This document shows positions 3,114 through 62,220 of a stretch of DNA of 64,000 nucleotides, in pieces. Source of the stretch: Octopus sinensis. Lineage: Eukaryota. The stretch covers positions 82,026,001 to 82,090,000 of the forward strand of contig NC_043001.1 in assembly GCF_006345805.1 (NCBI RefSeq), given 5' to 3'. Numbering within the stretch: position 1 is the first letter of the stretch; the number at the start of each line of letters is the position of its first letter. Below the pieces are notes generated by a model. It did no database searches, was not told where the DNA came from, and saw only the letters and a list, made by a program, of their open reading frames with translations. The position numbers were made by a program, and so were the translations under genes.

Positions 3114-3508
3114 TGTGGTAAGTAGCTTACTTACGAACTACATGGTTCCGGGTTCAGTCCCACTGCGTGGCACCTTGGGCAAGTGTCTTCTCCTTTAGCC
3201 TCGGGCTGACCAAAGCCTTGTGAATGGAATTGGTAGACGGAAACTGAAAGAAACCCGTCGTATATATGTATACGTATATGTATGTGTGTGTATATATGCT
3301 TGTGTATCTGTGTTTGTCCCCCCAACATCGCTTGACAACCGATGCTGGTGTGTTTACGTCCCCCTAACTTAGCGGTTCGGCAAAAAGAGATCGACAGAAT
3401 AAGTACTAGGCTTACAAAGAATAAGTCCTGGGGTCGATTTGCTCGACTAAAGCCGTTGCTCCAGCATGGCCACAGTGAAATGACTGAAACAAGTAAAAGA
3501 GGAAAAGA
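3114..3508 (+). mobile_element. SINE-A, near full length (tRNA-derived head, internal microsatellite, (TAAAAGAG)n tail)
   Basis: TGTGGTAAGTAGCTT, B-box-like GGTTCCGGGTTCAGTCCC, tail CAGCATGGCCACAGTGAAATGACTGAAACAAGTAAAAGAG; about 20 related copies in the window. Confidence 0.9.
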
Positions 3509-3624
3509 GAAGAATGAAGGAATTATACAAGAAATTTTAAGAGGTAGACAAAAAATTGTTTAAGGTAATAACGTAAATATTCTACTTTATTTTCATTTTA
3601 TTTCATTTCCTTGGAAAAATTTAA

Positions 3625-5946: not shown

Positions 5947-6289
5947 TACTCTTTTACTCATCGACCCCAGGACTTATTCTTTGTAAGCCTAGTATTTATT
6001 CTATCGGTCTCTTTTGTCGAACCGCTAAGTTACGGGGACTTAAACACACCAGCATCGGTTGTCAAGCGATGTTGGGGGGACAAGCACAGACACACAAACA
6101 TATACGCACACACACGCGCGCACACACACACATACATATACATATATACGACGGGCCTCTTTCAGTTTCTGTCTACCAAATCCACTGAAAAGGCTTTGGT
6201 CGGCCCAAGGCTATGGTAGAAGACACTTGTCCAAGGTGCCACGCAGTGGGACTGAACCCAGAACCATGTGGTTCCTAAGCAAGCTACTT
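5947..6289 (-). mobile_element. SINE-A copy (body and tail) interrupted in its head by the Tx1 pair; head remnant at 13228-13253
   Basis: SINE-A sequence stops at AGCAAGCTACTT (6278-6289) and resumes as AGCAAGCTACTT-ACCACACAGCCAC at 13228-13252. Confidence 0.92.
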
Positions 6290-6517
6290 TATTTCATATA
6301 ATTTGCCATTTAGGCATTTACAAAGAGGGGACAAACAAGGACAGACAAATATAAAGGGTGAAGTAGCTTAACACAGTTACAATTTTCGAATGAAATTACG
6401 GATAAGATTATAAACAATGAATTTTACGAAGGCAATGTTTAAAAATATTAATGATCATGTCGAAGGACGGACACCCAGCCATCCGGGTAGAACCTTTACT
6501 TTCTGATCCGGTCACAC

Positions 6518-9500
6518 TTACCTGGTGCCAAACATACCCATCTTGTATGCCACAGGCTTCCATCTTTTCACAAACATATCTCGTGACAGACACCTCTTCT
6601 CCAGCCTGATTTTGCTACTGAGGTGGTAACTAAAAAAGTTAATCAACCCCTGGCCGGAGACAAAGGTGCCTGTCACTATACCTTTCGTACGCATCTTCCA
6701 TACTGTTTCTTTCAGTATGGCTACTACACAGAAAAAACAAGCCTTTCTTTCCTGTTAAGGAAAGGGGGCGGCACAATCTCGATGACAGACTCAGCCGATA
6801 GCTATACTCTTCCCATCACTGACAACAGTTGTTCAACAAAAGCTATCAGTCCCGATAACTCCGGACACTCCACGAATGCGTGCAAGACGGTCTCCCTATC
6901 CTGCTCACATCGCGGGCATGTCGGCGAGACGGCACTACCGTGCCTTGACAGCTTGTCGCGAACAGGTAAAGCCGCACGGAAACACTGCCAGGCCAGGAAT
7001 TTCTGGTAATTATCCAGATACCCCGGCCCGAACGTCCTCCGGAACAGGTTGACCAACTGATTTTCATCGTAGCCCAGGGTCTCCCCCAAGGCGTCTTCGG
7101 ACTTAATCTCCACTAACCCGCTATAGAAATCCGTGGTGGAACTCCTGTTGCCGGCGTTGCCCACCCGAGATAGTAGCTGGAGCGCCTGACGGCACTCTAA
7201 ATGCCATTCACTCAGTTTAGGTCTCCGCTTGATCCATGCACCGATATCCGTTAGGGATGTTAACTGGGGAAGGTAGAACCGGACGTGCGGCGACCACACC
7301 TGCTCTCCAACCAGGTAAAGCCAGAGGTGCCTCAACCTTAACGCGAGTTTTCGCATCCTCAGCGGTTTCTGGCAGCAGACAGAGCGCTTTACAAGTGGCT
7401 TTCCTCCTTTCCACAAAAATCGGAAAAGGATTCTCTCCAACTTGTTCAGCCACAAATCGGGGCAAGGCACCACGGTCAGACGGTAGGTGATTACTGATGC
7501 TATAAACATCTGCACCACCTCCGCCTTCCCTAGCAGGGATAACGCCCGCCCAGACCAGGTCTGGGTTAGAGCGGTCACCTTGTTGGCCACCTCACTCCAA
7601 TTTTTCTCAATCTGGAGGTCTGGCCCGAACCAGACTCCGAGCAGCTTAACAGGACCTTCCGTCCAACGCCCTACGACGTTATTGGACGGCATCGGCTTGC
7701 CCCTCCAGGTGCCGAGTTGCAAACCGACCGACTTGTCCTTGTTAACCTTTGCTCCTGCCACCGCCTCGTAGCTTTTGATGGCCTCTTCCACCACTGGAAG
7801 CTGGCCTTCGTCTGCCACGATGATGGAGGTGTCATCCGCATACGCCGTAGCTCCTCTTCCACACCATAGATCATGCGGCGCGCCCCCTAGTGCCTCCAAC
7901 TTCCGCAGCAAAGGCTCAAGAGCCAATACGTATAGGAGCGAGGACAGGGGACACCCTTGACGAACTGAACGCTCGATCCTGAACGGCTTCGAAAAGGAAC
8001 CGTTCACCTTGACTACAGACTCGATGTCGCTATACAAAGCAGCGATCCAACCTCGAAAGGTCGGGCCTAGGCCAGCCTCTCCGAGGACCGTCGCCAGGTA
8101 CCGATGGTCGACTCTATCAAATGCTTTGGACTGGTCTAAATGTACTAGTGCTCCCCCTGCGCCAGAAAGCTTCCCCACCCTCTCTAAGGAGTAGCGTATA
8201 AGGTGGAGATTGTCGTGGATCGTTCTGCCGGGGATAGCGCACGTTTGCGCTTCCCCGACAAGTTTGTCCACGACCCGCGCCAACCTTTTTGCTAGCACCT
8301 TGGCCAGAATCTTTAACTCTGTGTTTAACAGAGTTATGGGCCTGAAGTTCCCTATCTCGTCCCCCTTGTTCGGGTCCCCCCTGATCAACGTCACCGCCCC
8401 CCGGCTCGCAGACTTGGGAATTCTCCCATTCTGCTGCCAGTTGGCGTAGACGCTAGCCAGCAGGTGCCCGAACAAGTCTGGCATACTTCTATAAAATTCA
8501 TAGGGCAGACCATCGAGACCCGGCGACTTCTCCCCGGGGCACTTGCCCAACACTTCGATTACTTCCTCGGCTGTGATTGGCCCTTCACAGCACTCAGCCT
8601 CTCGTGTCGAGAGGCGCGGGCCACCAGACAGGAAGTCCCTAAGGGCCTCACCATGATCCAGCGTCCCGCACCTCCCGAACAACTCGGCGAAGTGCTTGTG
8701 AAGTGCCTCACACATCTCGTCCCGGTTCTTGATCGTGCATCCGTTTTCATCAACAAGAGACCCAATTGTGGCATCGTTTCCACGCTGTGTTTCTATCGTA
8801 CGGGCCCATCCGGCAACATTAATTCCCTCACGGCCCAATGCTCGTACTTTAGCCCGGACTCTACATCCCTCATGTTTGGTTTTGAGGTGACGGTCTAATG
8901 CCGTTCTCACTGCTAAAATGTGAGATGCAGAGCCCAACCTCAACGCCTCCTCTAAGTTCTTAACTAGTTGCCCTTCTATTCTAGCCCTATCTAGTCTTAG
9001 TTGTTTACTAAATCTAATGGACTCGAATCGAATGGCTCTTTTGAGGGTGAACCACCACCGGTTATTAACCACGGCTCCGGTTAACGCCCTCTGCACTAAC
9101 ACCTTAATCCGGCTACGGTATGCCTCGCGTGTCAAAATAGACTTGTTCAGCTTCCAGTAGCCGGTTCCTATCTTAAGTGTGCTATCTATGTCCAGTCTAC
9201 ACGTGACCATTCTATGGTCAGTATAGGGCACCTGGACGAGCTGTGGACAACTAAAACTAGACTTATCTCTAGTTCTTATCACTATCCTGTCTAGATAAGA
9301 CTTGAACCTTCCGTCGCCACTCATCCAGGTCCACTCTGGGACGTTCGGATGGTCAAGTCTGTAACGATCTGCTAGCTGAAACCGCTTAAGCAGATCCACG
9401 AGACGTGAGTTCACTTTCCTATAGATCGAGCCAACGCTATCGATGTGTACGTCAACGATAGCATTAAAGTCCCCTAATATCACTAAAGTCTTCGACGTCA

Positions 9501-9891
9501 CGAGAAAGCCCTCTAGGCGCCGATAAAAATCAGTTTGGAACCCTCTAGCACAAGGTGCATAGAGTCCGATCAACCTGAAGGCCTTACTGCTGTATGTCAC
9601 ACCAAGGACGACCAGCCCACCTTCTGGGTCTACATAGACTGTACTTGTCTGTAGAGCCAAGTCTTTACGGATCAGTACCACTACGCCCCCTCGCCCTCCG
9701 GTCTGGCCAGGAGACATGATTTTCTCGTAGCCATTCAGGAGAGGCGAGAAGGTTTGTAGGCTGTCCAGCTTGGTCTCTGTAGCAACCATCACATGTATAT
9801 CATGTGATCTGAGGTCGTCGAGGAAACAAGCCTGCTTCCACTTCGAACTCAGACCACGCACATTTAAACAACCAAGGTTAAGCGAAGCCAT
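6518..9891 (-). pseudogene. ORF2: APE endonuclease + reverse transcriptase + C-terminal Zn finger; open for 1029 aa, then a premature TAG (6802-6804) and a frameshift near 6745
   Basis: Motifs LNVRGL, ETK, GDFNA, SYLDRI, DHRMV, YWKLN, KSPGLDG, FRPITLLN, DQSKAFD, QGCPLS, YADD, CPRC..ETVLHAFVEC; reading continues LSAESVIEIVPPPF and, in another frame, ACFFCVVAILKETVWKMR...GTR* to 6518. Confidence 0.93.
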
Positions 9892-9908
9892 TACAAAAAG
9901 TAAAAGTC

Positions 9909-11338
9909 CTACTTACATTTCGTTGGAGAGGTGGGGGCCGACCTCACCACACGTTTGTGGGCCCCTTCTTTCTCCTCTTTCTTCAGATAGTCCGGCAAGT
10001 TCGCGATATGCCGGATGGCGTTTGGATGTCTGTCTTTTAATTGTTTGAACGTTGTTTCCGCAATCCACGCGTGTCTATTTCGATCTTTGTATTTGTTGTA
10101 CAGTCTTGCTGACTGATGCTGAACCACAATATCGTTTATGTATTTGTCTTGTGTGTCGAATTCAATTAATATGAGTTCATTTTCTTTTTTGTCTTCTTTT
10201 TTTCTGGGCCAGTTGAGCGGGATTTTTTTTTCCGTGTCTGTGGTGTGTCTTTGTTTTTATTATTTTTTGTAGGGGATGTGGACGGGGATGCTGCACGAAT
10301 TCTTTTACGAACTGGTGTAAATCCCCCCTCTGATACCTCCATGGTATCGTCTGGGGTAGCAATAGTTTGTTCGGTAGGCGCCGCAGTTTTTAGGGGGGTG
10401 GGAGGTTTTAATAGTGTAGGGGTTTGTGAGTGCGAGGGCTTGGTTTTTTCTTCAGTCTGTTTTGGGGTTGGCACCGTAACAGCAGGAGTGGGATTTTTTG
10501 TTTTTGTAGGGTTAGGTGTGTTTGCAAGGGTAGGGACTTTTTTATTATCTGAGGGGCCTGGTGTCTGCGGTTTCTTTTGCTTGTCTGGACAGTCTACACG
10601 AATATGGCCCTTTTTGCCGCAGGCGTAACAGGTGGGTTTTCGGCCTTCGACCTGTACCCTGAGGGCTACGTTCTCGCCCACGAGCACCCTCTCAGGAAGG
10701 AGCTGCAGGTCCTCCGCTGTTCCTTGAATTAATATATTAATGTTACGCCCGAGCCAAAATCGAGGGGTAGAGCATGTTACTTCTAGTATTTTTATTTTGT
10801 CCGCCCTTTTATATAACAGGGCGGCCACTACCTCTACCGGATCTACTTCCGGCGGGGCTTCTACAATCCTGACCCGGGACGTCCTGCGTCCCCTATAGCT
10901 TGAGAAAAGTACCACCTCCTTGGTTTTTAGGGGGTTCACAGAATGCCCGCGGGCCATTTCTTCCCCCGAGAAGCGGACATCCACAGTGCCATATGCCCGT
11001 CCCCTGGCGACGTACACGATGTCCTTCCAAATCGGGGACAGGCATTTCTCGATGGTGCTTTTTTCAAAGTGTTTGAACCTTCTGCTTTGTGGACAGAAAG
11101 TTTTAAACACTACGGTCCGCTTCTCGGTCTCCACGATACTGGCGGAGGGTGATATTTTAACATCACCACCCTCCTCTTGCATTCTTTTAAATAGCTCGAT
11201 GAGCTGGTTGACATCGATGTCAATGTTCTCGGTAGCCACTGCGGCTACCGCAGAAAATTTTTTAACATTGCTCTCCTCAAGAGCACTACTTTCGTGGATA
11301 ATTTCAACAGGCATTATTCTGTTGAAATTAGACAACAC
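9909..11338 (-). CDS. ORF1 (gag-like RNA-binding protein, RRM-like region + CX2CX4HX4C); 390-aa frame plus a probable -1-frame C-terminal extension to 9909
   Basis: CYACGKKGHIRVDC knuckle; alternative frame TEKKIPLNWP...ENELILIEFD...TKCK* ends 17 nt before the ORF2 ATG; first ATG is at 11314. Confidence 0.88.
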
Positions 11339-11718
11339 AAAAATTACGAATATTGGTTTCCCACAAAACTGGAAAACCTATAGAAAGTTTTTCTTCCAAA
11401 GTAGTTCAAAAAAGCAGTTCAAAATTCCAATCCCACCCCCATTCGGGGGAGGGGCACAAAAATAGTCTGGCAGGACTATATATAGTCACGTAAATAAAAA
11501 GCCACAATGGCTAACAGTTCAACGGTAAGAAATTATCCAATTATTCCCCGGTAAAACCGGAGAACAAGATAGTTCAGCAACGTTTAAAGACAAATTTTCA
11601 GTAGTGGAAATTCAACAATTAACAACACAGCAAAATTCTTACCGGGAAGAAAACGCGTCCAAACCGTAGTACGGTGAGCAAAGTCACTCTTCAGTCAGTG
11701 AGGTTAGCAAAGCTACTT

Positions 11719-13227
11719 TATTTCAACTATTTTGCCATAAAGGCATTACATAGAGGGGACACTACAAAAACATGTGGAGACATATAACAATTAAAAATAA
11801 AATGATACTGTGAGTGACATGAAAATGAACGTGAGAAAATAAATTAAGTTTATGATAACATGCATGATATCTGAAAATGAAATATGAAGTATGACGAGTG
11901 TGCTACTCACCCCACTCTGAGCAACACCACTCGCTGCCTTTGAGTCTGAATTCTTCTCTAATCTCTGGTCTAGTCCTTCTTTTTCCACTCTCGCTATCGC
12001 TTAAAGACAACTTTCTTTCGCAACCTTTTTCACCGGGGGAGGGGTTTTCTGAATTCTGTGGTGTCTGCTCTTTTTTCTTTTTCTTTTTTTCTTGTGGGGA
12101 AAGGGAGTGGGTGGGTCTGGTGTCTGTATGGGGCGGGTGGGTCTGAGTAGTCTTGGGTGGGATGGAGTTGGACTGGGGTACCATTTCACACTCAGTGTTC
12201 TTTCTTTTCTTCCTCTTCTTACTTCTGCTCTCTGCTACTCTCCATTCTTCCTCCTTTCTTCCGTCTTTGTCTTCGTCCTCTTTTTTCCTCTTTGTCTCCG
12301 CAACTGGTTCATCTATTTTTCCTTCTTTTTCTTCTGTAGGGGGCAGTGTGCTCTTTTTCTTCTGTAGGGGGCAGTGTGCTCTAATGTGGCCTTTTTGGCC
12401 ACATTTAAAGCACCGCGGGGTTCTGCCCTCTACCCATACTCTCAGTATTATTTCTCCCATTGACACCGTTTCCGCCAAATTTTCCAGCTCCCTCGCCTCC
12501 GCTTGTATGATCATTTCCAGTAATTTTCCTTTGTAACTTCTTTCCTCTGTCTCTGTGGCTTGGAGGACAGTCACCTCCTCACTTCCAACGAGGACGGCTG
12601 CCGCAACCCAAGCCACCTTTATGTCAGGTGGAATTCCTTCTACCCTCACCTTAGAATTTTTTCTTCCAAGATAAGAGGGTAGAAGCACCAGTTCCTCAGC
12701 TTTTACGGTTGCACTTGCCAGCCTCCTCGCCTCCTCCTCTGTTTTAAACTGGACAACCACCGTCCCATATCCGCTTCCGTTTGTTATGTATGTTACTTCG
12801 TTCGAATGCCCCTTGAGAGCTTTTTCTATTTTTTCCATATTCATCTGCTCCACTCTCCTACTCTCCACTGAGTGCACCTTGTAGGTGATGGTTTTTCTTT
12901 CCATATTCACCATAACCGTTTTCGGGGGTAGTAACTTTACGTCACTTCCCACCTTCTGTGTCATCTTATACAGCTCCTTCAGTTCAGTCAGGTCCACTTC
13001 CTTTTTCTTCACTCCCGCCGCGTCAGCAAAACTCTTTATTTTTTCCAGATGTTGGTCCATCCTGTTCACCGCCTTAACGAGCTCCTCCTCAGATGTGGAC
13101 AGCTCGTACTCGCTAAGGTCCGAATACATTATTTTCCACTCGCCAACAAACCGCTGGCGAGCAGCTCAAAGGATTCTGTCCGCCTAGTCAAAACTCGACA
13201 CAGTAAACAACTCGACGCATGCGCGTT
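11719..13227 (-). mobile_element. ORF1-only (half-LINE/HAL1-like) non-autonomous Tx1-related element, 1.5 kb
   Basis: Bounded by target copies at 11706-11718 and 13228-13239; single ORF; 3' tail homologous to that of the neighbouring LINE. Confidence 0.88.
11903..13129 (-). CDS. Intact 408-aa ORF1-like protein with CCHC zinc knuckle
   Basis: CFKCGQKGHIRAHC; colinear with the neighbouring ORF1 (GYGTVVVQF vs AYGTVDVRF, PSYLGRK vs SSYRGRR, LRVWVEGRTP vs LRVQVEGRKP). Confidence 0.88.
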   Translation of the reverse strand: MYSDLSEYELSTSEEELVKAVNRMDQHLEKIKSFADAAGVKKKEVDLTELKELYKMTQKVGSDVKLLPPKTVMVNMERKTITYKVHSVESRRVEQMNMEKIEKALKGHSNEVTYITNGSGYGTVVVQFKTEEEARRLASATVKAEELVLLPSYLGRKNSKVRVEGIPPDIKVAWVAAAVLVGSEEVTVLQATETEERSYKGKLLEMIIQAEARELENLAETVSMGEIILRVWVEGRTPRCFKCGQKGHIRAHCPLQKKKSTLPPTEEKEGKIDEPVAETKRKKEDEDKDGRKEEEWRVAESRSKKRKKRKNTECEMVPQSNSIPPKTTQTHPPHTDTRPTHSLSPQEKKKKKKEQTPQNSENPSPGEKGCERKLSLSDSESGKRRTRPEIREEFRLKGSEWCCSEWGE

Positions 13228-13275
13228 AGCAAGCTACTTACCACACAGCCACCCCTTATATATATATATATATAT

Positions 13276-13439
13276 GAGTGGCTGTGTGGTAAGTAGCTTG
13301 CTAACCAACCACATGGTTCCGGGTTCAGTCCCACTGCGTGGCATCTTGGGTAAGTGTCTTCTGCTATAGCCCCGGGCCGACCAAAGCCTTGTGAGTGGAT
13401 TTGGTAGACGGAAACTGAAAGAAGCCTGTCGTATATATG

Positions 13440-13475
<36 letters not shown>

Positions 13476-13691
13476 CGCGTGTTTGTGTGTTTGTGTTTGT
13501 CCCCCTAGCATTGCTTGACAACCGATGCTGGTGTGTTTACGTCCCCGTCACTTAGCGGTTCGGCAAAAGAGACCGATAGAATAAGTACTGGGTTTACAAA
13601 GAATAAGTCCCGGGGTCGATTTGCTCGAGTAAAGGCGGTGCTCCAGCATGGCCGCAGTCAAATGACTGAAACAAGTAAAAGAGTAAAAGAG
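13276..13691 (+). mobile_element. SINE-A, full length, head-to-head with the interrupted copy
   Basis: GAGTGGCTGTGTGGTAAGTAGCTTGCT... through ...GAAACAAGTAAAAGAGTAAAAGAG. Confidence 0.92.
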
Positions 13692-14141
13692 TATATACGC
13701 TGATACTGGATATACTGTATTTTACTGTGCCCACTTTAACATGAGAACAAACATTTACTGTTCATACTCACTGTTACTATACATCACGATGTTATTGTGC
13801 ATAGTAAGTACCACTATATATACGAGTAGCTATTATGTATAGAAAGTTTTACTGATATTGTATATGTAATATATCACTGTTTTAGGTTTACATCAGGCAT
13901 AGGCAACTTTATCGAGAAGCTGGCCGCATGAGACATGGCTCCTCATCAGGCGGATTGCACTACTGGATAATTTCAAGGAAGTTTTTTCTCAAGACCGTAG
14001 GTTTGTCATGACTGATTTAGATCCGCTCGTTTCAAAGTGGGCTGCTCTGTGACCCCTGGCGGTTTGTTGGGCTCACATCGATAAGCTCTGATCCAATTTT
14101 CTGTGAACCAAAAAGGTTATGTGTGTGTGTGTGTTGTGTGC

Positions 14142-21026: not shown

Positions 21027-22019
21027 ATGTATGTCTTCTTTTATGCCTTTATTTGTTTCAGTCATTTGACTGCCGCCATGCTCCGTTGACTGTGAAATAA
21101 ACAACAGATTTAAAAGACACCATGTTAGGGGAGATGACACTTTTAAATCAACGTCTTTAAAAATATTCCCTTCAAAATCTATAGAAAAATGTGTCGTAAA
21201 AATAATAAAAAAACAGCACCTTTTATTTGTTTCAGTCATCGAGATGTAGCCATACTAGGGCGCTACCTTGAAAAGCTTAGTCAAACTCAGTATTATCTTA
21301 AAGTCTGATACTTATTCTATCGCTGTCTTTTGTCGAATCGCTAAGTTGCAAGGAGTAAGCAAACCGACATTGGTTTTCTTAAGCCATGGTAGTGGGGACA
21401 AACACAGAAACAGACAGACAGACAGACACATACACACACACCTATATATGTATACTACGGGCTTCCACACAGTTTCCATCTAGCAAATTCATTCACAAAG
21501 AAATAGTCGGGGCTTTAGTAGAAAACACCCGCTCAGGGTGCCGCGCTATGGGGCTGAACAGGAAATCACGTAGATGCAAAGCAAACTTCTTAATCACACA
21601 GTTATCTTTAATTGCACGTCAAAAAAAAAAAAGTTGTTTCTTGTTGAGGAGGAGAATGGGCATACAATTGTCTCTTATCAAACATTTGAAGATCTCCTTA
21701 TTAGCGAAATGGCATTGGATAATGGTAAAAAAAAATTAGGTGAAAATAAACTTATGTGCATGGATTGACAAGAACGTCTTTGATTCGGTTCTGTACAACT
21801 GGTTCTTTAAAAAGAGGATGGAAATCCGTACATTTAATGGCACATTAAGGAACATAGTAATAACACGAAAGAAATGAGAAGCGCTCCTTACGCTTTGTTA
21901 CAGAGTCACGTTTGTAAGCTCTGTAGCACGAAGCTCTGTAGTACGCACGTATGCGCTAAGTGTGAAATCTGAAATCGCCTTTCATGGGAAATATGACTAT
22001 AGAGTATTAATTCTTTTGA

Positions 22020-22230
22020 ATTTTTGACACAAGGCTAACAGTTTGTGGAGCGGAGATAAGCTGATTACATCGACCCCATCGCTCAGCTGGTACTTAGTTT
22101 AGCGAATTCGAAAGGATGAAACGTAGTGTCGATCTCGGCAGAATTTGAACTCAGAACCGAAAGAGACGGAAGAAAAGACACTAACCATTGTGTCCGATGC
22201 ACTTACGATTCAACCAGCTCGCTACCTTTA
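22020..22230 (-). mobile_element. Degraded SINE-B copy (tail type 1)
   Basis: GATTACATCGACCCC...CTGGTACTT...GAAAGGATGAA...GAATTTGAACTCAGAAC, homologous to 44837-45070. Confidence 0.75.
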
Positions 22231-23580: not shown

Positions 23581-24497
23581 CCGGAACGTGCTAAGAAAAT
23601 ATAGGTACATCAACAGATTGAGAAACGTTGCTGATTATATGATTAACCTTGATGATATTAAAGCATTGTTATGTTATTCATATGTATATCACCTAAGGAT
23701 ACCTAATTCATTTTGATGTCAAAAAGGAAACACTTGAAATATTTCTCGTTTCACAAGCAATAATTACTATCCACGGGTATAAGACGTTTTGGCACAACCG
23801 TTTTAGCGCTGTTCATGTGGCATCGTTGAAGCAACGCTGTCTTATTTGACAGCAGGCGTTTTAAGGTTTTCTCGCATTCTCACACTCCTTCTCGTTTCCT
23901 CACCGCTCTTGGCTTTCACCCTTTCGGAATCGATAAATTAAGTAGTAGTAGAATACTGGGGTCAATGTGTTCGACCACCCTCTCCAAAATTTGAAATCAT
24001 CATCATCGTCATGATTCTTCTTCTTCTTCTTCTTCTTCTTCTTCTTCTTCTTCTTCTTCTTCTTCTTCTTCTTCTTCTTCTTCTTCTCCTTCTCGTTGTT
24101 GCTGTTGTAGTTGTTATTATTTATTTATTTATTCATTGCCGTACCTTGTACTTGATATATACTTTATTGCATCGACCCTGAAGGAATGAAAGGCAAAATT
24201 GACCTTGACACGCATCGATCTCAGAATCTACCGCAAAGCATTTTCTCCGATGCGCCAATGGTTCTGCCTGCTTGCCGACTCAGATATATTATAAATAACC
24301 ATATGACTGTTGGATGGTAGAATTGATAGTAAGGCGGAGGAAATGCATTGTAGTGTTTCGTTACACACGATTACGTTTGGTGAAGGAGCGTGGCCTAGTG
24401 GTTGGTGTGTTATGTAGACCTATAACTTACTTTATCGATCTGTTTTGGACCAACCACTAAGTAATTGGATCGTAAATAAACTAGCACCTGTTGTTAG

Positions 24498-24964: not shown

Positions 24965-25389
24965 GACTGCTTCTTTCAGTTACCGTTTATCAAATCCACT
25001 CACAGGGATTTGGTTGGCTATAGTAGAAGATACTTGCCCAAAGTGTCAAGTGGAGCTGAACCCGGAACCCTGTACTTAGGAAGCAAACTTCTTACCTCAC
25101 AGACACATATCCATGGGACCGCTGGATACCAGAGTTGGTTGCAAGGCAGAGAAAATCTGTTGTGCTACTTAGTTACACTTGATTAGGTTCGAAGTTCAAA
25201 TCCTGCTGGGAGGCAACATTGCCTTTCATCCTTCCGGTATCGATTATAAATAAGTATTAGACAAGGACAGAGATTGATTTATCGATTATTTCCGCCCCTT
25301 AAATATATCTGGCCTTGTGCCAAATCTTAGAAACCATCACTTGTAATAATAACAAAAACTTCACTTGGCATCATTTCATATATATCCTT

Positions 25390-29420: not shown

Positions 29421-29815
29421 TTTTTACTTGTTTCAGTCATTTGACTGCGGCCATGCTGGAGCACCGCCTTTAGTCGAGCAAATCGACCCCGGGACTTATT
29501 CTTTGTAAGCCCAGTACTTATTCTATCGGTCTTTCTTGCCGAACCGCTAAGTGACGGGGACGTAAACACACCAGCATCAGTTGTCAAGCAATGCTAGGGG
29601 GACAAACACAGACACACAAACACACACATTCATATATATATACATATATACAACAGGCTTCTTTCAGTTTCCGTCTACTAAATCCACTCACAAGGCATTG
29701 GTCAGCCCGGGGCTATAGCAGAGGACACCTGCCCAAGATGCCACACAGTGGGACTGAACTCTGAACCATGTGGTTGTTTAGCAAGCTACTTACCACACAG
29801 CCACTCCTGCGCCTA
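29421..29815 (-). mobile_element. SINE-A, full length
   Basis: Complete from TAGGCGCAGGAGTGGCTGTGTGG to the tail. Confidence 0.92.
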
Positions 29816-31888: not shown

Positions 31889-33674
31889 GTATGTATGTAT
31901 TTATGTATGTATGTTTATATGTATGTATGTATGTATGTAGTATGTATGTATGTAGTATGTATGAGCGGTATTGGTATCCAGAAGACCCAGAATGGCAGGT
32001 AAGGCTATGTAAGTGCTACGGGAGGACGGTAGTTAGACTCTCGGTTCTCTAATAATACGAGAGGGGTGTCTAATGCGGGTCTTGTGTGACCATGTACGTA
32101 TTAAAAAAATGAGATGCATTTGTAATGACAAGATATTAACTCCTATGTGTGTTGCTGTTGAGGTAGCACTCTATTTTCGATAAGTGTCGTATAGTTAATA
32201 CTGTGTGCTGCGATTTGAATTAGTTTGGCTGCTATTTCTACCGAATCAGTCGACTACGCAGAGGCTCCTACGTTGGGATGTCATAAAAAAATTTTGTGTA
32301 TGTTTTACTCCTTGTCAGAAAGCAGTTAGTTGATGAATTTAGTCGTAATGTGTGAAGAAAATCAATTAGTTAATGGCCAACTGAACATTTCATCATCAAT
32401 AATGACTAATAATTTACCAGAATTAAGCAGATAAGACCAAAAAATCTATCCCTTTCCTCCATTTTTGTCCAACGTTGTCTCTCTCACCGTTTCATGCTTT
32501 GTATTCTCTCGACACCACCGTTTACTATTTCGCTTTATTTTTGCTTGTCCCTGACTCTGTCTTTCCGTCTTTCTGTTTGTTTTTCTATTTGTCCATCTGT
32601 TTATCTGTCTGCTTCTGTTTCTCTCATTAACACACACTATAGTCTCTATACTCTCTCGTACTGTTAGAAATAGCAGCCAGTTCTCTTTCAAATAACGTGT
32701 TGTTCTCTCAAGAAAACAAGGATGCACTGATAAAATGAGATATGGTCCTAGATATCCTATGTTTGGATGGTCACAATTAGAACGTCTTTGATCATAGGTC
32801 AGTTTGACCATGGCTTACGGCAAAATAGGAAACCGTTATACATACTTGTGTAACGGTTTCTAATTTAGACAAAAAAGAAGCAATTTTGATGGGAGGGAAC
32901 TAATCAATACCATCGGACCAAATACTTGCCTCATAGTTTCTATTATTATTATCGACCCCAAAAGAATAAAAAAAAAAGAAGCTAACCCTCGCGGAATTTG
33001 AACTCGCAATCTGAAGAAATACAACACAGCATTTTACTCCCACGCCTTTACGATTTTGCCTGCTGGCCACCTTAATGGATAATATTCACTTTCTAATTTT
33101 GTCACAAGGGTTGCAGTTTTGGAAGAGGTGGCGAGTCTATTACATCGACTCCAGTGTTCAATAGGTATCTATTTTATCGTCTCCGAAATGAAGGGAACAG
33201 TCAAGCTCAGAATGTAAGGAACCGGAAGAAACGCAGTTAAGCATTTTGCTTGACGCCCTTATGACTCTGTCAGTTTGCAGTTGGAATGCACTTTCCAACT
33301 AAATGGTTCTGGATTCAATCCCACTGTGTGGCACCTTGGGTTAGTGTCTTCTACCAAAGCCTTACGAGTGGACTAAGTAGAGGGAAACAGAAAGAAGACT
33401 CTAGTATATATATATATATATATATATATATGCATATACACACGCGCGCGCACACACAGACACACACACACACATGCATGTATATACCTATGTGTGTGGG
33501 TCTTTGTGTTTGTCTCACCGCTTGTCAACCGGTTTTGGTGAGTTTAAATACCTGTAACTTAGCGGTTCGGCAATAAGTCCTGGGGTCGATTTATTCGACA
33601 AAAACCCCTTTAAGGCGATGCTCCAGCGTAGCCACAGTCATGACTAAAAGATAAAATATAACAGACAGAACACC

Positions 33675-35024: not shown

Positions 35025-35441
35025 AGCAAATTTTGGCACAAAACCAGCAATTTCGACGGGAGAGGGTAATTCGATTACATCGACCCCATTGCTCGAAAGG
35101 ATGAAACCAAAGTCGACCTCGGTGGAATTTGAACGCAGAAGAATGTGAAGACGGGAGAAATACCGCGAAGCATTTCGCCCGAGACGCAAAGGATTCTACC
35201 AATAGTATATTATACATGGGATAGAGAGCTAGCAGAATCGTTACAGTGTTGGAAAAAATACTTAGCAGTATTTCCAACAGTATTTTTATGTTCCGAGATC
35301 AAATGCTGCTGAAGGACAGACATTTTTGAAAACTTGAAAAAAACCGACATTTTGAAAACATTTTTGAAACACACACACACATATTTATATACACATGCAT
35401 TCATGCATACATACATAAATACATACATACATACATATATT

Positions 35442-40054: not shown

Positions 40055-40600
40055 TAATATACATATATATAATATACTTACACATATATAGCCTGCTCGT
40101 GAGATTAACCCTTAAAGTAGTTCCCAAGGAGTTTCAACGCGACACAGAATGTAACAAGGCTGGTCCTTTGAAATACAGACACTAGTCATTTTTGTCAACT
40201 GAGTGGACCGGAGCAACTTGAAATAAAGTGTCTCGCCCAAGGACACAATGCACCATCTGCTATCGAACTCACGACATTACAATCATGAGTTGAATACCCT
40301 AACAGCTAAGCTACAGGCCTTCACACTCATCCGCACAATAAAGAAGGCGGAGGAGATGTTAGACAAGGGTTACACTGCGGGTCGCGAGAAGAGTGTTAGA
40401 TAAATGTTAGATTGCTTGTTCCTTACGATGTTCAAGAGCACCAAATACCAAGGGGTTCAGTGCCTGTGATGTCGATGTTTATAAGGAGTACTATCACTTA
40501 CTAACTGTCAGACTGAACGCCTTAGAAGCACTCAGCACTAGTATGTTACTAACGAAACCATCGGATTCAGGACTAAAAAATTATTACAAATATTAATTCT

Positions 40601-41008
40601 TATTCCTTTATTGTCCACAAGGGGCTAAACATCGATGGGACAAAGAAGAACATTAAGTCGGTTACATCGACCCCAGTGCGTAACTGGTACTTAATTTATC
40701 GACCCCGAAAGGATGAAAAGTAAAGTCGACCCCGGCGGAATTTGAACCCAGAACGTAACGGCAGACGAAATACCTATTTCTTTACTACCCACAAGGGGCT
40801 AAACACATACAGGACAAACAAGGACAGACAAACGGATTAAGTCGATTATATCGACCCCAGTGCGTAATTGGTACTTATTTAATCGACCCCGAAATGATGA
40901 AAGACATAGTCGACCTCGGCGGAATTTGAACTCAGAACGTAGCGGCAGACGAAATACCGCTAAGCATTTCGCCCGGCATGCTAACGTTTCTGCCAGCTCG
41001 CCACCTTA
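40601..41008 (-). mobile_element. SINE-B dimer (tRNA-derived head TAAGGTGGCGAGCTGGCAGAAACG; two bodies with Tx1-like tails)
   Basis: Units 40601-40774 and 40775-41008; flanking direct repeat TATTAATTCT at 40591-40600 and 41007-41016. Confidence 0.9.
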
Positions 41009-41019
41009 TTAATTCTGGT

Positions 41020-44145: not shown

Positions 44146-44335
44146 TAAGGTGGCGAGATAGCAGAATAATTAGCGTTCCGGGCGAAAATCTTTGCAGTAT
44201 TGCACCCGGTGCTACGTTTTGAGTTCAAATTCCGCCGAGGTCAACTTTGCCTTTCATCCTCTTGGGGATCGATTAAATAAGTACCAGTTATGCACTCGAG
44301 TCGTCCCCTCCACAATGCTGCCCTTGAGGTAAAAT
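44146..44335 (+). mobile_element. SINE-B copy
   Basis: TAAGGTGGCGAGATAGCAGAA...GAGTTCAAATTCCGCCGAGGTC...TAAGTACCAGTT. Confidence 0.8.
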
Positions 44336-44407: not shown

Positions 44408-44836
44408 GTTATATTTGTTGTTATTATATTATTATATTATTATTTTATTATTATTATTATATATTATTTGTGTGTTGTTGTTATTATATTATTATTATTA
44501 TTATTATTATATATTATTATTATTATATGAGAGAGCAGTACATACCATCAAAGTGACACAGGGATAAAATATACGAAACCCTGTATACCCATCATGACAG
44601 CCCATCTGACAAGGGTACACCTGACACATGCATCACAACCATATGTGTGCGACATGGTGATCTCATTTCAAGATAAACAGCGCATGACCTTGCAGGTGGG
44701 GCCCAGTTTCTTTAGGTCGAATAGCCCATCCCACTGAAAAGGTCCCTCAATAAGGGTCGTTTAAGGATGTTGAACGAAACACCAATGTTTCCAGAGGTGA
44801 ATTATTCAAACCCCAAAGAATTCCTCTCAACATATA

Positions 44837-45070
44837 TATTTCTTTACTACCCACAAGCGGCTACACACAGAGGGAACAAACAAGGACAGGCAAACGGATT
44901 AAGTCGATTACATCGACCCCAGTGCGTAACTGGTACTTGATTTATCGACCCCGAAAGGATGAAAGGCAAAGTCGACCTCGGCGGAATTTGAACTCGGAAC
45001 GTAAAGAGAGACGAAATACGGCTACGCACTTCGCCCGGCGTGCTAACGTTTCTGCCAACTCGCCGCCTTA
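44837..45070 (-). mobile_element. Young SINE-B with Tx1-like tail and 16-17-bp TSD
   Basis: TSD TTCCTCTCAACATATA at 44821-44836 and 45071-45086; ends in GAAATA with no poly(A). Confidence 0.93.
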
Positions 45071-45415
45071 TTCCTCTCAACATATAGCTATGTTGCTCCA
45101 CGACTAGCTGTGCTCAAGATCAGGGATGCAGATATCATCAGCCACTAAGGGACATGTTCAGAATGTTAAGGTCAAGCAACTGACAAGCAAATCTGTGGTA
45201 TTGAGCAGAATATTTGTTGTAGCTCCTTCTTTTATACCAAGACAAAACAATGTACATAACACTTCCATTCAGTTAAGACCAGAAGCTTCGGTCGGATGGA
45301 GGTGCCACGCAGTGGGACTGAACCCGGGATCAAGCCTCTTACTACACAAATACGCTTGCTCTTATATATGAACAATGTCTTCACACACACACACACACAC
45401 ACGCACACACACACA

Positions 45416-61820: not shown

Positions 61821-62220
61821 GTGGCTGTGTGGTAAGTAGCTTGCTTACCAGCCACATGGCTCCAGGTTCATTCCCACTGCGTGGCAGCTTGGGCAAGTGT
61901 CTTCTGCTATAGCTTCAGGCCGACCAAAGCCTTGTGAGTGGATTTGGTAGACGGAAACAGAAAGAAGCCCGTCGTATATATGTTTATATACGCATGTGTG
62001 AGTATATGTTTGTGTGTCTGTGTTTGTTCCCCAACATCGCTTGACAACCGATGGTGGTGTGTTTACGCCCCCCGTAACTTAGCGGTTCGGCAAAAGAGAC
62101 CGATAGAATAAGTACTTGGCCTCCAAAGAAGAAGTCCTGGGGGCGATTTGCTCGACTAAAAGCGGTGCTCCAGCATGGCCGCAGTCAAATGACTGAATCA
62201 AGTAAAAGAGATAAAAGAGA
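61821..62220 (+). mobile_element. SINE-A, full length, preceded by an older degraded copy (about 61680-61820)
   Basis: Colinear with the other copies. Confidence 0.9.

What the first reader, a model, noticed from the sequence alone, without database searches (positions are those of the whole stretch)
44821..45086. SINE-B carries the 3' tail of the Tx1 LINE: a candidate SINE-LINE partnership
Seen: the LINE 3'UTR segment AGAGGGGACAAACAAGGACAGACAAA (6324-6349) matches this SINE's tail at 24 of 26 positions. 21 nt of it are identical in the SINE-B copy at 40812-40832. LINE and SINE both terminate in GAAATA without poly(A), and this copy has a 16-17-bp TSD typical of APE-mediated TPRT. Established: stringent SINEs share 3' ends with their partner LINE; Tx1-mobilised SINEs are rare (crocodilian SINEU is a precedent). 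Inference: the same Tx1 lineage mobilises SINE-B while inserting itself into SINE-A.
Basis: partly seen in the sequence, partly recalled or inferred. Interest (0 to 1): 0.8.

Follow-up and report, generated by a model that had tools for sequence, protein, structure and literature searches.

The report
SINE tail resembles a neighbouring LINE tail
A short mobile element (SINE) in what looks like an octopus genome shares a real 30-base block, a small hairpin and the same last six bases with the tail of a nearby site-specific L1/Tx1-type LINE, so the two tails are probably related, but whether this LINE lineage actually copies the SINE is not shown.

Summary
LINE 6324-6349 matches SINE-B 44869-44894 at 24/26 (27/30 over 6320-6349) and 40807-40832 at 23/26, with 0 matches expected by chance. 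All elements end in GAAATA without poly(A). The SINE-B copy (44837-45069, minus strand) has a perfect 17-bp TSD.

For the partnership:
- The block lies 32-34 nt from the 3' end in both elements.
- It falls inside the ~65-nt tail module that is the only 3'UTR part conserved between the LINE and a diverged ORF1-only "half-LINE" (ORF1 37% identical).
- Over the last 60 nt, LINE and SINE-B are 72% identical, against 74% for LINE and half-LINE.
- An unsupervised alignment predicts one shared 4-bp hairpin with compensatory changes.

Against it:
- The terminal 32 nt are only about 55% identical, which is not significant against a window-wide null.
- Hairpin loops differ consistently (UAAAU/UUUAU in the LINEs, YUUGW in the SINEs).
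- LINE and half-LINE sit in tandem at one exact nucleotide of a CORE-SINE head, so they look site-specific. None of the 3 scorable SINE-B-superfamily insertion events, nor a fourth copy that abuts a SINE-A, uses that site.

Only one LINE locus and three block-bearing SINE-B tails were available, and no outside genome data could be retrieved. Verdict: tail homology is likely; mobilisation by this lineage is plausible (about 0.45) and unproven.

The parts
44837..45069 (-). SINE-B copy B1 (233 bp). The head AAGGCGGCGAG... is at 45069. It has a B-box-like GAGTTCAAATTCC and a central domain ...TTTCATCCTTTCGGGGTCGAT...GGGGTCGATGTAATCGAC. The tail ends ...GTAGTAAAGAAATA at 44837. There is no TTTT run in the sense strand.
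44820..44836 (.). Left copy of the perfect 17-bp target-site duplication of B1 (attcctctcaacatata). The right copy is at 45070-45086.
45070..45086 (.). Right copy of the 17-bp TSD of B1.
44865..44894 (-). Block shared with the LINE tail: 27/30 overall, and 24/26 for 44869-44894. It lies 32-57 nt from the SINE 3' end.
44849..44861 (-). Predicted tail hairpin of B1: GCCG-CUUGU-GGGU (the innermost pair, next to the loop, is a G/G mismatch in this copy). It lies 12 nt from the 3' end.
40775..41006 (-). SINE-B copy B2, full length and about 89% identical to B1. It carries the block at 40807-40832 (23/26, with 21 contiguous) and the hairpin GCCC-CUUGU-GGGU at 40787-40799.
40601..40774 (-). SINE-B copy B3, 5'-truncated and joined directly to the 3' end of B2. 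Its tail keeps only part of the block (GTTCTTCTTTGTCCCATCG) and ends in GGAATA. The B2+B3 pair is flanked by a single 9-10-bp TSD AGAATTAAT(A) at 40591-40600 and 41007-41016.
6290..11702 (-). L1/Tx1-type LINE, about 5.4 kb. ORF1 is 11338-10166 (390 aa, CCHC). ORF2 is 9891-6802 (1029 aa; APE, RT, zf-RVT). The ORF2 C-terminus is broken by a stop at about 6802 and a frameshift at about 6740-6770, and homology to a relative's ORF2 continues to about 6524. The 3'UTR is about 6290-6523 and ends TATATGAAATA.
6290..6354 (-). LINE tail module, about 65 nt. It is the only part of the 3'UTR conserved with the half-LINE. It contains the shared block (6320-6349), the hairpin UGCC-UAAAU-GGCA (6304-6316) and the GAAATA terminus.
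11719..13224 (-). ORF1-only 'half-LINE'. Its ORF is 13129-11903 (408 aa, CCHC), only 37% identical to the LINE ORF1. Its last ~65-70 nt are about 76% identical to the LINE tail, with the hairpin UGCC-UUUAU-GGCA at 11733-11745 and a GAAATA end.
13225..13250 (-). 5' piece of the occupied SINE-A (CORE-type) head, GGCTGTGTGGTAAGTAGCTTGCTAAC. The first copy of the target duplication AAGTAGCTTGCTAAC is at 13239-13225.
11703..11718 (-). Middle copy of the target duplication (AAGTAGCTTTGCTAAC), between the half-LINE and the LINE.
5960..6289 (-). The rest of the occupied SINE-A. It starts with the third copy of the target (AAGTAGCTTGCTTAGG, 6289-6274).

Best explanation
SINE-B in its block-bearing tail type (copies B1, B2 and partly B3) carries a ~60-nt 3' module that is homologous to the tail module of the L1/Tx1-type LINE lineage seen at 6290-13224. 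The module has four shared parts: a T/G/C-rich block (TTTGYCTGTCCTTGTTTGTYCCCTCT), a 4-bp hairpin with a 5-nt loop, an A-rich linker, and the terminus GAAATA.

The most likely history is the classical one. The SINE took its tail from a LINE of this lineage, and the LINE reverse transcriptase recognises that tail and copies the SINE by target-primed reverse transcription. This gives 5' truncations, chimeras and 10-17-bp TSDs.

The actual driver is probably a related LINE family and not the two elements in this window, for two reasons. The terminal 32 nt and the hairpin loop differ consistently between the window's LINEs and the SINE-Bs. The window's LINEs also insert at one exact nucleotide of the SINE-A head, whereas SINE-B copies are dispersed.

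Shown: the sequence match, its position, the module boundary, the hairpin covariation, the TSDs and the tandem site-specific LINE insertions. Inferred: the direction of transfer, recognition by the RT, and which LINE family does the work.
For: - The block matches at 24/26 and 23/26, with 0 expected by chance, and extends to 27/30.
- It lies at the same offset from the 3' end: 34-59 nt in the LINE and 32-57 nt in SINE-B1.
- Homology between LINE and half-LINE starts about 65 nt from the end, at the block, although their ORF1s are only 37% identical and the rest of their UTRs is unrelated. The block therefore belongs to a constrained LINE tail module.
- Identity over the last 60 nt is 74% for LINE and half-LINE, 72% for LINE and B1, and 70% for LINE and B2.
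- MAFFT plus RNAalifold on 10 tails (LINE, half-LINE and 8 SINE-B-superfamily tails), run without supervision, gives a single consensus hairpin. Three of its four pairs show compensatory changes.
- In that hairpin 85% of cells are paired, against 61% in shuffles (0 of 500 shuffles reach the observed value). Slid controls give 22-42%.
- All of these elements end in GAAATA without poly(A).
- TSD lengths are 17, 16 and 9-10 bp for the SINE-Bs and 15-16 bp for the LINEs.
- L1-Tx1 is a recently active LINE group in Octopus vulgaris, with 13 families, 421 insertions and a mean of about 5.4 kb per insertion. Most octopus SINE families are unclassified (PMC13282606).
Against: - The distal 32-34 nt are only about 55% identical. 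Shuffle p values are 0.003-0.1. Against 8,526 real 60-mers from the window they are not significant, with 0.06-0.5 of the null scoring as high.
- Hairpin loops differ: UAAAU or UUUAU in the LINEs, and CUUGU, UUUGU or CUUGA in the SINE-Bs.
- The hairpin and the CCCTC motif also occur in SINE-B subfamilies that lack the block and have quite different termini, such as ...TTAGAAACC or (ATC)n/(ATT)n. They may therefore belong to the SINE body and not to a LINE-derived tail.
- None of the 3 scorable SINE-B-superfamily insertion events uses the LINE site AAGTAGCTTGCTAAC. Their TSDs are TATATGTTGAGAGGAAT, AGAATTAAT(A) and ATTAATACNCTATAGT. A fourth copy abuts the 5' end of a SINE-A and is not at the site either.
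- Target choice is set mainly by the LINE endonuclease (PMC4494074, citing Takahashi and Fujiwara 2002).
- The sample is one LINE, one half-LINE and three block-bearing SINE tails.
- The hairpin structure was derived from the same alignment on which it was counted.
Confidence: 0.45

Rival explanations
1. The same site-specific LINE family seen at 6290-11702 is the current mobiliser of SINE-B.
For: - The block matches at 27/30 and the whole 60-nt tail at 72%.
- Both end in GAAATA.
- The LINE is young, with nearly intact ORFs.
- SINE-B1 is young, with a perfect 17-bp TSD.
Against: - The terminal 32 nt and the hairpin loop differ, whereas the half-LINE, which shares the LINE's site, keeps 28/34 of the terminal part.
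- No SINE-B insertion examined is at the LINE's target.
- The LINE-type distal tail occurs only in the two LINE elements, and the SINE-B distal tail only in SINE-Bs, with no intermediates in 64 kb.
Confidence: 0.2
2. Mosaic exchange without a functional partnership. The 30-nt block moved between a SINE-B subfamily and the LINE 3'UTR by recombination or template switching. SINE-B keeps its own ancestral terminal tail and is mobilised by a different LINE clade.
For: - Similarity is mosaic: the proximal block is 90% identical and the distal part about 55%.
- The distal SINE-B tail (GTTTAGCCCCTTGTGG...) resembles other SINE-B subfamilies that lack the block, for example GTTAGCCTTGTG in the copy at about 21996-22230.
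- SINE-B shows template-switch products (the B2+B3 chimera).
- Dong-R4 and CR1 are more active than L1-Tx1 in O. vulgaris (PMC13282606).
Against: - The block lies at the same distance from the 3' end in both elements.
- It is inside the module conserved between two LINE families with 37% ORF1 identity. The half-LINE retains about 17/22 of the corresponding stretch.
- The hairpin geometry and the GAAATA terminus are shared as well.
Confidence: 0.25
3. Chance or compositional convergence of two T/G-rich stretches, with no common origin.
For: - The block is quasi-repetitive (TGTC/TTGT units).
- A weaker version, TGTTTGTCCCC, also occurs inside SINE-A next to its (TG)n tract.
Against: - No matches are expected in shuffles.
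- The match has E about 1e-5 within the window.
- Only about 0.1-0.2% of real window 60-mers score as high, and that set includes the true copies themselves.
- The offset, the hairpin and the terminus are the same in both elements.
Confidence: 0.05

Closest known systems
Stringent SINE-LINE pairs with a common 3' tail (for example eel UnaSINE1 with UnaL2; the tortoise Pol III SINE with CR1; Ohshima and Okada's 'common tail' model, as cited in PMC4824008 and PMC4494074)
   Same: A short element with a tRNA-like head and a LINE in the same genome share a 3' module. The module has a small stem-loop near the end and a defined terminus that is not poly(A). Insertions are flanked by TSDs.
   Different: In known pairs the similarity normally runs to the very 3' end. 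Here the strong match is sub-terminal (32-59 nt from the end), and the last 32 nt and the loop are diverged. The candidate partner is an L1/Tx1-type LINE, whereas the bivalve pairs in PMC4824008 use L2 and CR1 LINEs. From my own knowledge, RTE-clade partners are also usual.
SINEU mobilised by Tx1-Mar in crocodilians (Kojima 2015, PMC4494074)
   Same: A non-autonomous retroposon is linked to target-specific Tx1 LINEs. Tandem insertions sandwiching a TSD are seen there and here (LINE plus half-LINE).
   Different: - SINEU has snRNA-derived heads and poly(A) tails, and no LINE on Repbase matched its 3' region. The link rests on shared target preference: 90%, 23% and 13% of copies lie in the Mariner target.
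- Here the link rests on tail similarity, and a shared target was not seen in any insertion examined.
Target-specific Tx1-clade LINEs (Tx1L in Tx1D, Keno in U2 snRNA genes, Kibi and Koshi in microsatellites; as summarised in PMC4494074)
   Same: L1-like ORF2 (APE, RT and a C-terminal zinc-binding domain). ORF1 with a CCHC knuckle. Insertion at one exact site of a multicopy sequence. Tandem arrays separated by the duplicated target.
   Different: The target here is the tRNA-like head of a CORE-type SINE. Placement within the Tx1 clade by RT phylogeny was not done.
HAL1 and other ORF1-only or internally deleted non-autonomous LINEs (nonautonomous L1 and Vingi derivatives, cited in PMC4494074)
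   Same: The half-LINE keeps an ORF1 and the 3' tail module, lacks ORF2, and uses the same target, so it must rely on ORF2p supplied in trans.
   Different: Its ORF1 is only 37% identical to that of the neighbouring LINE. It is therefore not a simple deletion derivative of that copy.

Membership tests
SINE-LINE partnership by shared 3' tail | SINE and LINE of the same genome share the 3'-terminal sequence | tested here: inconclusive
   The 30-nt sub-terminal block matches at 27/30 and the last 60 nt at 72%, and both end in GAAATA. The last 32 nt are about 55% identical and not significant against the window null.
SINE-LINE partnership by shared 3' tail | A conserved stem-loop in the tail at an equivalent position | tested here: met
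   One consensus hairpin of 4 bp with a 5-nt loop lies 12-14 nt from the end. 85% of cells are paired against 61% in shuffles (0/500), and 3 of 4 pairs show compensatory changes. Caveats: only 10 related sequences, the structure was derived from the same alignment, and loop sequences differ between LINEs and SINEs.
SINE-LINE partnership by shared 3' tail | The similarity holds between family consensus sequences, and no other LINE clade matches better | not testable with these tools
   No genome of this or a close species was reachable. The window holds no other LINE coding fragment.
SINE-LINE partnership by shared 3' tail | Where the LINE is target-specific, the SINE shares its target preference | tested here: not met
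   LINE and half-LINE both sit at GGT|AAGTAGCTTGCTAAC of a SINE-A head. The SINE-B-superfamily TSDs are TATATGTTGAGAGGAAT, AGAATTAAT(A) and ATTAATACNCTATAGT, and one further copy abuts the SINE-A 5' end. The sample is too small to exclude a weak preference.
SINE-LINE partnership by shared 3' tail | Trans-mobilisation shown experimentally | not testable with these tools
   This needs a retrotransposition assay.
Tx1 clade of non-LTR retrotransposons | The RT groups with Tx1 references in a phylogeny | not tested
   No named Tx1 or L1 references were returned. The closest solved structure is human L1 ORF2p, E 2e-63 over residues 6-842. That places the LINE in the L1/Tx1 group only.
Tx1 clade of non-LTR retrotransposons | An ORF2 with APE endonuclease, RT and a C-terminal zinc-binding domain, and an ORF1 with CCHC knuckle(s) | tested here: met
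   Pfam hits in ORF2 are Exo_endo_phos, RVT_1 and zf-RVT. Both ORF1s hit zf-CCHC.
Tx1 clade of non-LTR retrotransposons | Target-specific insertion into a multicopy sequence | tested here: met
   Two elements with 37% ORF1 identity are inserted at the same nucleotide of one SINE-A head, leaving three copies of the 15-16-bp target. Only one locus was seen.
tRNA-derived SINE (for SINE-B) | A head related to a tRNA with Pol III A and B boxes | tested here: inconclusive
   A B-box-like GAGTTCAAATTCC is present and the body has no TTTT run. ARAGORN found no tRNA, and Rfam found no tRNA match at E<=1.
tRNA-derived SINE (for SINE-B) | Short, non-coding, multicopy, flanked by TSDs and showing 5' truncations | tested here: met
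   The copy is 233 bp. At least 9 related copies or fragments occur in 64 kb, with TSDs of 17, 16 and 9-10 bp and one 5'-truncated copy.

The most novel reading that the evidence does not exclude
The large octopus-specific SINE expansion, or at least the SINE-B superfamily, is driven by L1/Tx1-type LINEs that recognise a small conserved 3' hairpin. This would be the first stringent, tail-sharing partnership between a tRNA-type SINE and Tx1. In it, the SINE RNA would be integrated at dispersed sites while the LINE itself homes to the head of another SINE. Target choice would then depend partly on the template RNA and not only on the endonuclease.
Probability: 0.25. Interest if true: 0.6.

Novelty: new member of a known kind. 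Interest (0 to 1): 0.4.

Why it matters
According to the papers read here, SINEs make up about 12% of octopus genomes and about 40% of their repeats, their expansion is specific to octopuses, and most families are unclassified. None of these papers names a LINE partner for them (PMC13282606, PMC8967140).

A demonstrated L1/Tx1 partner would name the engine of that expansion. It would also add a clade that, to my knowledge, has only one proposed SINE client (SINEU), and that case rests on target sharing and not on a shared tail. If a site-specific LINE can spread a SINE to unrelated sites, that would bear on how far target choice is set by the endonuclease and how far by the RNA.

As it stands this is a reasonable lead from one locus and not a demonstrated partnership.

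Tried and rejected
1. More copies from public data.
- Exact look-ups of the window's ORF2 and both ORF1s found no record.
- The best ORF2 relative (62% identity, GCA_024449705.1) lies on a 3-kb contig that ends 113 nt after the stop, so its tail is missing.
- Relatives at 40% identity have unrelated tails.
- ORF1 relatives, including an O. bimaculoides protein, have no contig on record.

2. Pattern scans.
- The block gave 3 short chance hits in metagenome contigs and none in viral contigs.
- A SINE-B core motif gave none in genome or viral contigs.

3. Separating Tx1 from L1 by the names of homologues. No informative names were returned.

4. tRNA origin of the SINE-B head. ARAGORN and Rfam found nothing.

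5. My eye-alignment suggested that the distal tails of several SINE-B subfamilies are homologous to the LINE's distal tail. Local-alignment scores against 8,526 real window 60-mers did not support this, so I dropped it as sequence evidence and kept only the hairpin result.

6. Other LINE clades in the window that might match the SINE-B tail better. tblastn with 24 LINE proteins found nothing outside 6500-13200, and the SINE-B distal tail occurs only in SINE-Bs.

7. Single-sequence folding of the tails. The z-scores were not significant.

Full report
**What is at the coordinates**

All relevant elements read on the minus strand. The finding's interval holds a 233-bp SINE, here called SINE-B copy B1, at 44837-45069.
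- Its head, AAGGCGGCGAG..., is at 45069 and carries a B-box-like GAGTTCAAATTCC.
- It has a central domain (TTTCATCCTTTCGGGGTCGAT...GGGGTCGATGTAATCGAC).
- Its tail ends ...GTAGTAAAGAAATA at 44837.
- It is flanked by a perfect 17-bp duplication, attcctctcaacatata, at 44820-44836 and 45070-45086.

**The match**

The 26-mer at 6324-6349 recurs at 44869-44894 with 2 mismatches and at 40807-40832 with 3 mismatches, 21 of those bases being contiguous. It occurs nowhere else in the window. None of 100 dinucleotide-preserving shuffles gave a match. BLAST extends the match to 27/30. A 21-base version found only three short, unextended hits among 241 million metagenome records and none in viral contigs. 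The block is therefore not a common low-complexity word, and chance can be set aside.

**The LINE**

The LINE occupies 6290-11702.
- ORF1 (390 aa) has a CCHC knuckle.
- ORF2 (1029 aa) has APE, RT and zf-RVT domains.
- The closest solved structure is human L1 ORF2p, with E 2e-63 across residues 6-842.
- The ORF2 C-terminus is damaged by a stop at about 6802 and a frameshift at about 6740-6770. Homology to a relative that is 62% identical continues to about 6524.
- The 3'UTR is therefore only about 234 nt.

Immediately upstream lies an ORF1-only "half-LINE" at 11719-13224. Its ORF1 is only 37% identical to that of the LINE.

Both elements sit in sense orientation at the same nucleotide of the tRNA-like head of one CORE-type SINE, called SINE-A. 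The layout is:

GGCTGTGTGGT AAGTAGCTTGCTAAC | half-LINE | AAGTAGCTTTGCTAAC | LINE | AAGTAGCTTGCTTAGG...

The 15-16-bp target is thus present three times. Intact SINE-A heads elsewhere in the window read straight through this site. Two independent insertions of diverged elements at one nucleotide are the signature of a target-specific LINE. The same pattern is described for Tx1 families and SINEU-3 (PMC4494074).

I could not place the RT within the Tx1 clade as opposed to L1 proper, because the homologue searches returned no named references. L1-Tx1 is, however, the L1-like group recorded as recently active in Octopus vulgaris (PMC13282606). An ORF1 relative comes from O. bimaculoides, which suggests an octopod genome.

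**Evidence that the shared block is part of a LINE tail module**

1. The block lies 34-59 nt from the LINE 3' end and 32-57 nt from the SINE 3' end.
2. The only part of the two LINE 3'UTRs that is conserved is the last ~65-70 nt (about 76% identity), and it begins at the block. The half-LINE keeps about 17/22 of the corresponding stretch.
3. Over the last 60 nt, identity is 74% for LINE and half-LINE, 72% for LINE and B1, and 70% for LINE and B2.
4. All of these elements end in GAAATA without poly(A).
5. I ran MAFFT and RNAalifold without supervision on ten tails: LINE, half-LINE and eight SINE-B-superfamily tails. The result was exactly one consensus structure, a 4-bp stem with a 5-nt loop about 12-14 nt from the end. 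Three of the four pairs show compensatory changes, for example UGCC/GGCA, UGGC/GCCA, UGCC/GGUA and GCCC/GGGU.
6. On that alignment 85% of cells pair, against 61% in shuffles (0 of 500 shuffles reach the observed value). When the 3' partners are slid by 1-3 columns, 22-42% pair.

These points make a private capture by this one LINE copy unlikely. They fit the classical model in which a SINE takes its tail from a LINE.

**Evidence against a simple partnership with this LINE**

1. The strong match is sub-terminal. The last 32-34 nt are about 55% identical. Shuffle p values are 0.003-0.1. Against an empirical null of 8,526 real 60-mers from the window they are not significant, whereas the proximal block is. 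The half-LINE keeps 28/34 of that terminal part.
2. Loop sequences differ consistently: UAAAU or UUUAU in the two LINE elements, and CUUGU, UUUGU or CUUGA in the SINE-Bs.
3. The SINE-B superfamily in this window has at least four tail types. Only one of them carries the block. Others end in ...TTAGAAACC or in (ATC)n/(ATT)n/(TTC)n runs, yet they keep the CCCTC motif and the hairpin. These features may therefore belong to the SINE body.
4. Target choice in LINEs is set mainly by the endonuclease, and the published Tx1-SINE precedent rests on shared target preference (PMC4494074). Here no SINE-B-superfamily insertion examined uses the LINE's site:
   - B1 has the TSD TATATGTTGAGAGGAAT.
   - The B2+B3 pair is flanked by a single AGAATTAAT(A).
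   - A subfamily copy at about 21996-22230 has ATTAATACNCTATAGT.
   - Another copy abuts the very 5' end of a SINE-A and not the site 11 nt inside it.

   This rules out a strong preference of the SINEU-3 kind (about 90%). It does not rule out a weak preference.
5. The LINE-type distal tail occurs only in the two LINE elements and the SINE-B distal tail only in SINE-Bs. No other LINE coding fragment is present in the window for comparison.

**Conclusion**

The tails are very probably homologous. The most likely reading is that the block-bearing SINE-B subfamily took its tail from a LINE of this L1/Tx1 lineage and is or was mobilised by one. That LINE is probably a related family and not the two site-specific elements seen here (confidence about 0.45).

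The alternatives are:
- a mosaic exchange of the block with no functional link, SINE-B being driven by another clade: about 0.25;
- chance: about 0.05.

Sharing of tails between SINEs and LINEs is a well-known phenomenon. A Tx1-type partner for a tRNA-type SINE would be a new member of that kind and is of moderate interest, because the papers read here name no partner for the large octopus SINE expansion.

**Limits**

The evidence comes from one LINE locus, one half-LINE and three block-bearing SINE tails. No genome-wide consensus sequences were available. No RT phylogeny was done. The hairpin statistics come from ten related sequences, and the structure was derived from the same alignment on which it was counted. 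All attempts to retrieve further copies from public collections failed.

Noticed in passing
window 5960-13250 (minus strand): Two diverged L1/Tx1-type elements are inserted in tandem at the same nucleotide of one CORE-type SINE-A head. One is an ORF1-only half-LINE and the other a 5.4-kb LINE. The 15-16-bp target AAGTAGCTTGCTAAC is present three times. This looks like a site-specific LINE lineage whose target is a SINE.
   Followed up: partly
window 6361-6369 (+ strand; inside the LINE 3'UTR): The LINE 3'UTR carries the 9-nt core of its own target site, AAGTAGCTT (followed by AAC), in antisense orientation. The chance of this 9-mer falling in a 234-nt UTR on either strand is about 0.002. The half-LINE UTR lacks it. 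It could be a pairing segment for the target, or a coincidence.
   Followed up: partly
window 6524-6802 (minus strand): The LINE ORF2 is cut short by a stop at about 6802 and a frameshift at about 6740-6770. Homology to a relative's ORF2 C-terminus continues to about 6524, so the real 3'UTR is about 234 nt and not about 510 nt.
   Followed up: yes
window 40591-41016 (minus strand): A full-length SINE-B (B2) is joined directly to a 5'-truncated SINE-B of another tail variant (B3). The pair is flanked by one 9-10-bp TSD, AGAATTAAT(A). This is either a single insertion of a chimera made by RT template switching or a dimeric SINE.
   Followed up: partly
window 21996-22230, 23800-24000, 25110-25330, ~32800-32975, 35030-35200, 44147-44310: Further SINE-B-superfamily copies share the head and central domain but have at least three other tail types: ...GTTAGCCTTGTGTCAAAAATTCAAAAGA, ...TGGCCTTGTGCCAAATCTTAGAAACC, and ...GGTAAAATCATCATC followed by (ATT)n or (TTC)n. 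This suggests tail swapping and possibly several LINE partners.
   Followed up: partly
window 13225-13305: Two SINE-A heads lie head to head as a 92% inverted repeat separated by a (TA)n run, next to the LINE insertion site.
   Followed up: no
SINE-A copies, e.g. window 13266-13700, 3114-3509, 29422-29806, 61821-62219: SINE-A appears composite. It has a tRNA-like head plus a CORE-like segment, then an internal (TA)n(TG)n microsatellite, then a 3' half. The 3' half contains motifs resembling the SINE-B central domain (GGGGTCGAT, AAGTAC) and a weak copy of the block (TGTTTGTCCCC).
   Followed up: no
window 35030-35060: A SINE-B-like copy ends (...GCCAAAATTTGCT) exactly at the first base of a SINE-A (GACTGTGTGGTAAG...). 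This may be a nested insertion or a composite element.
   Followed up: no
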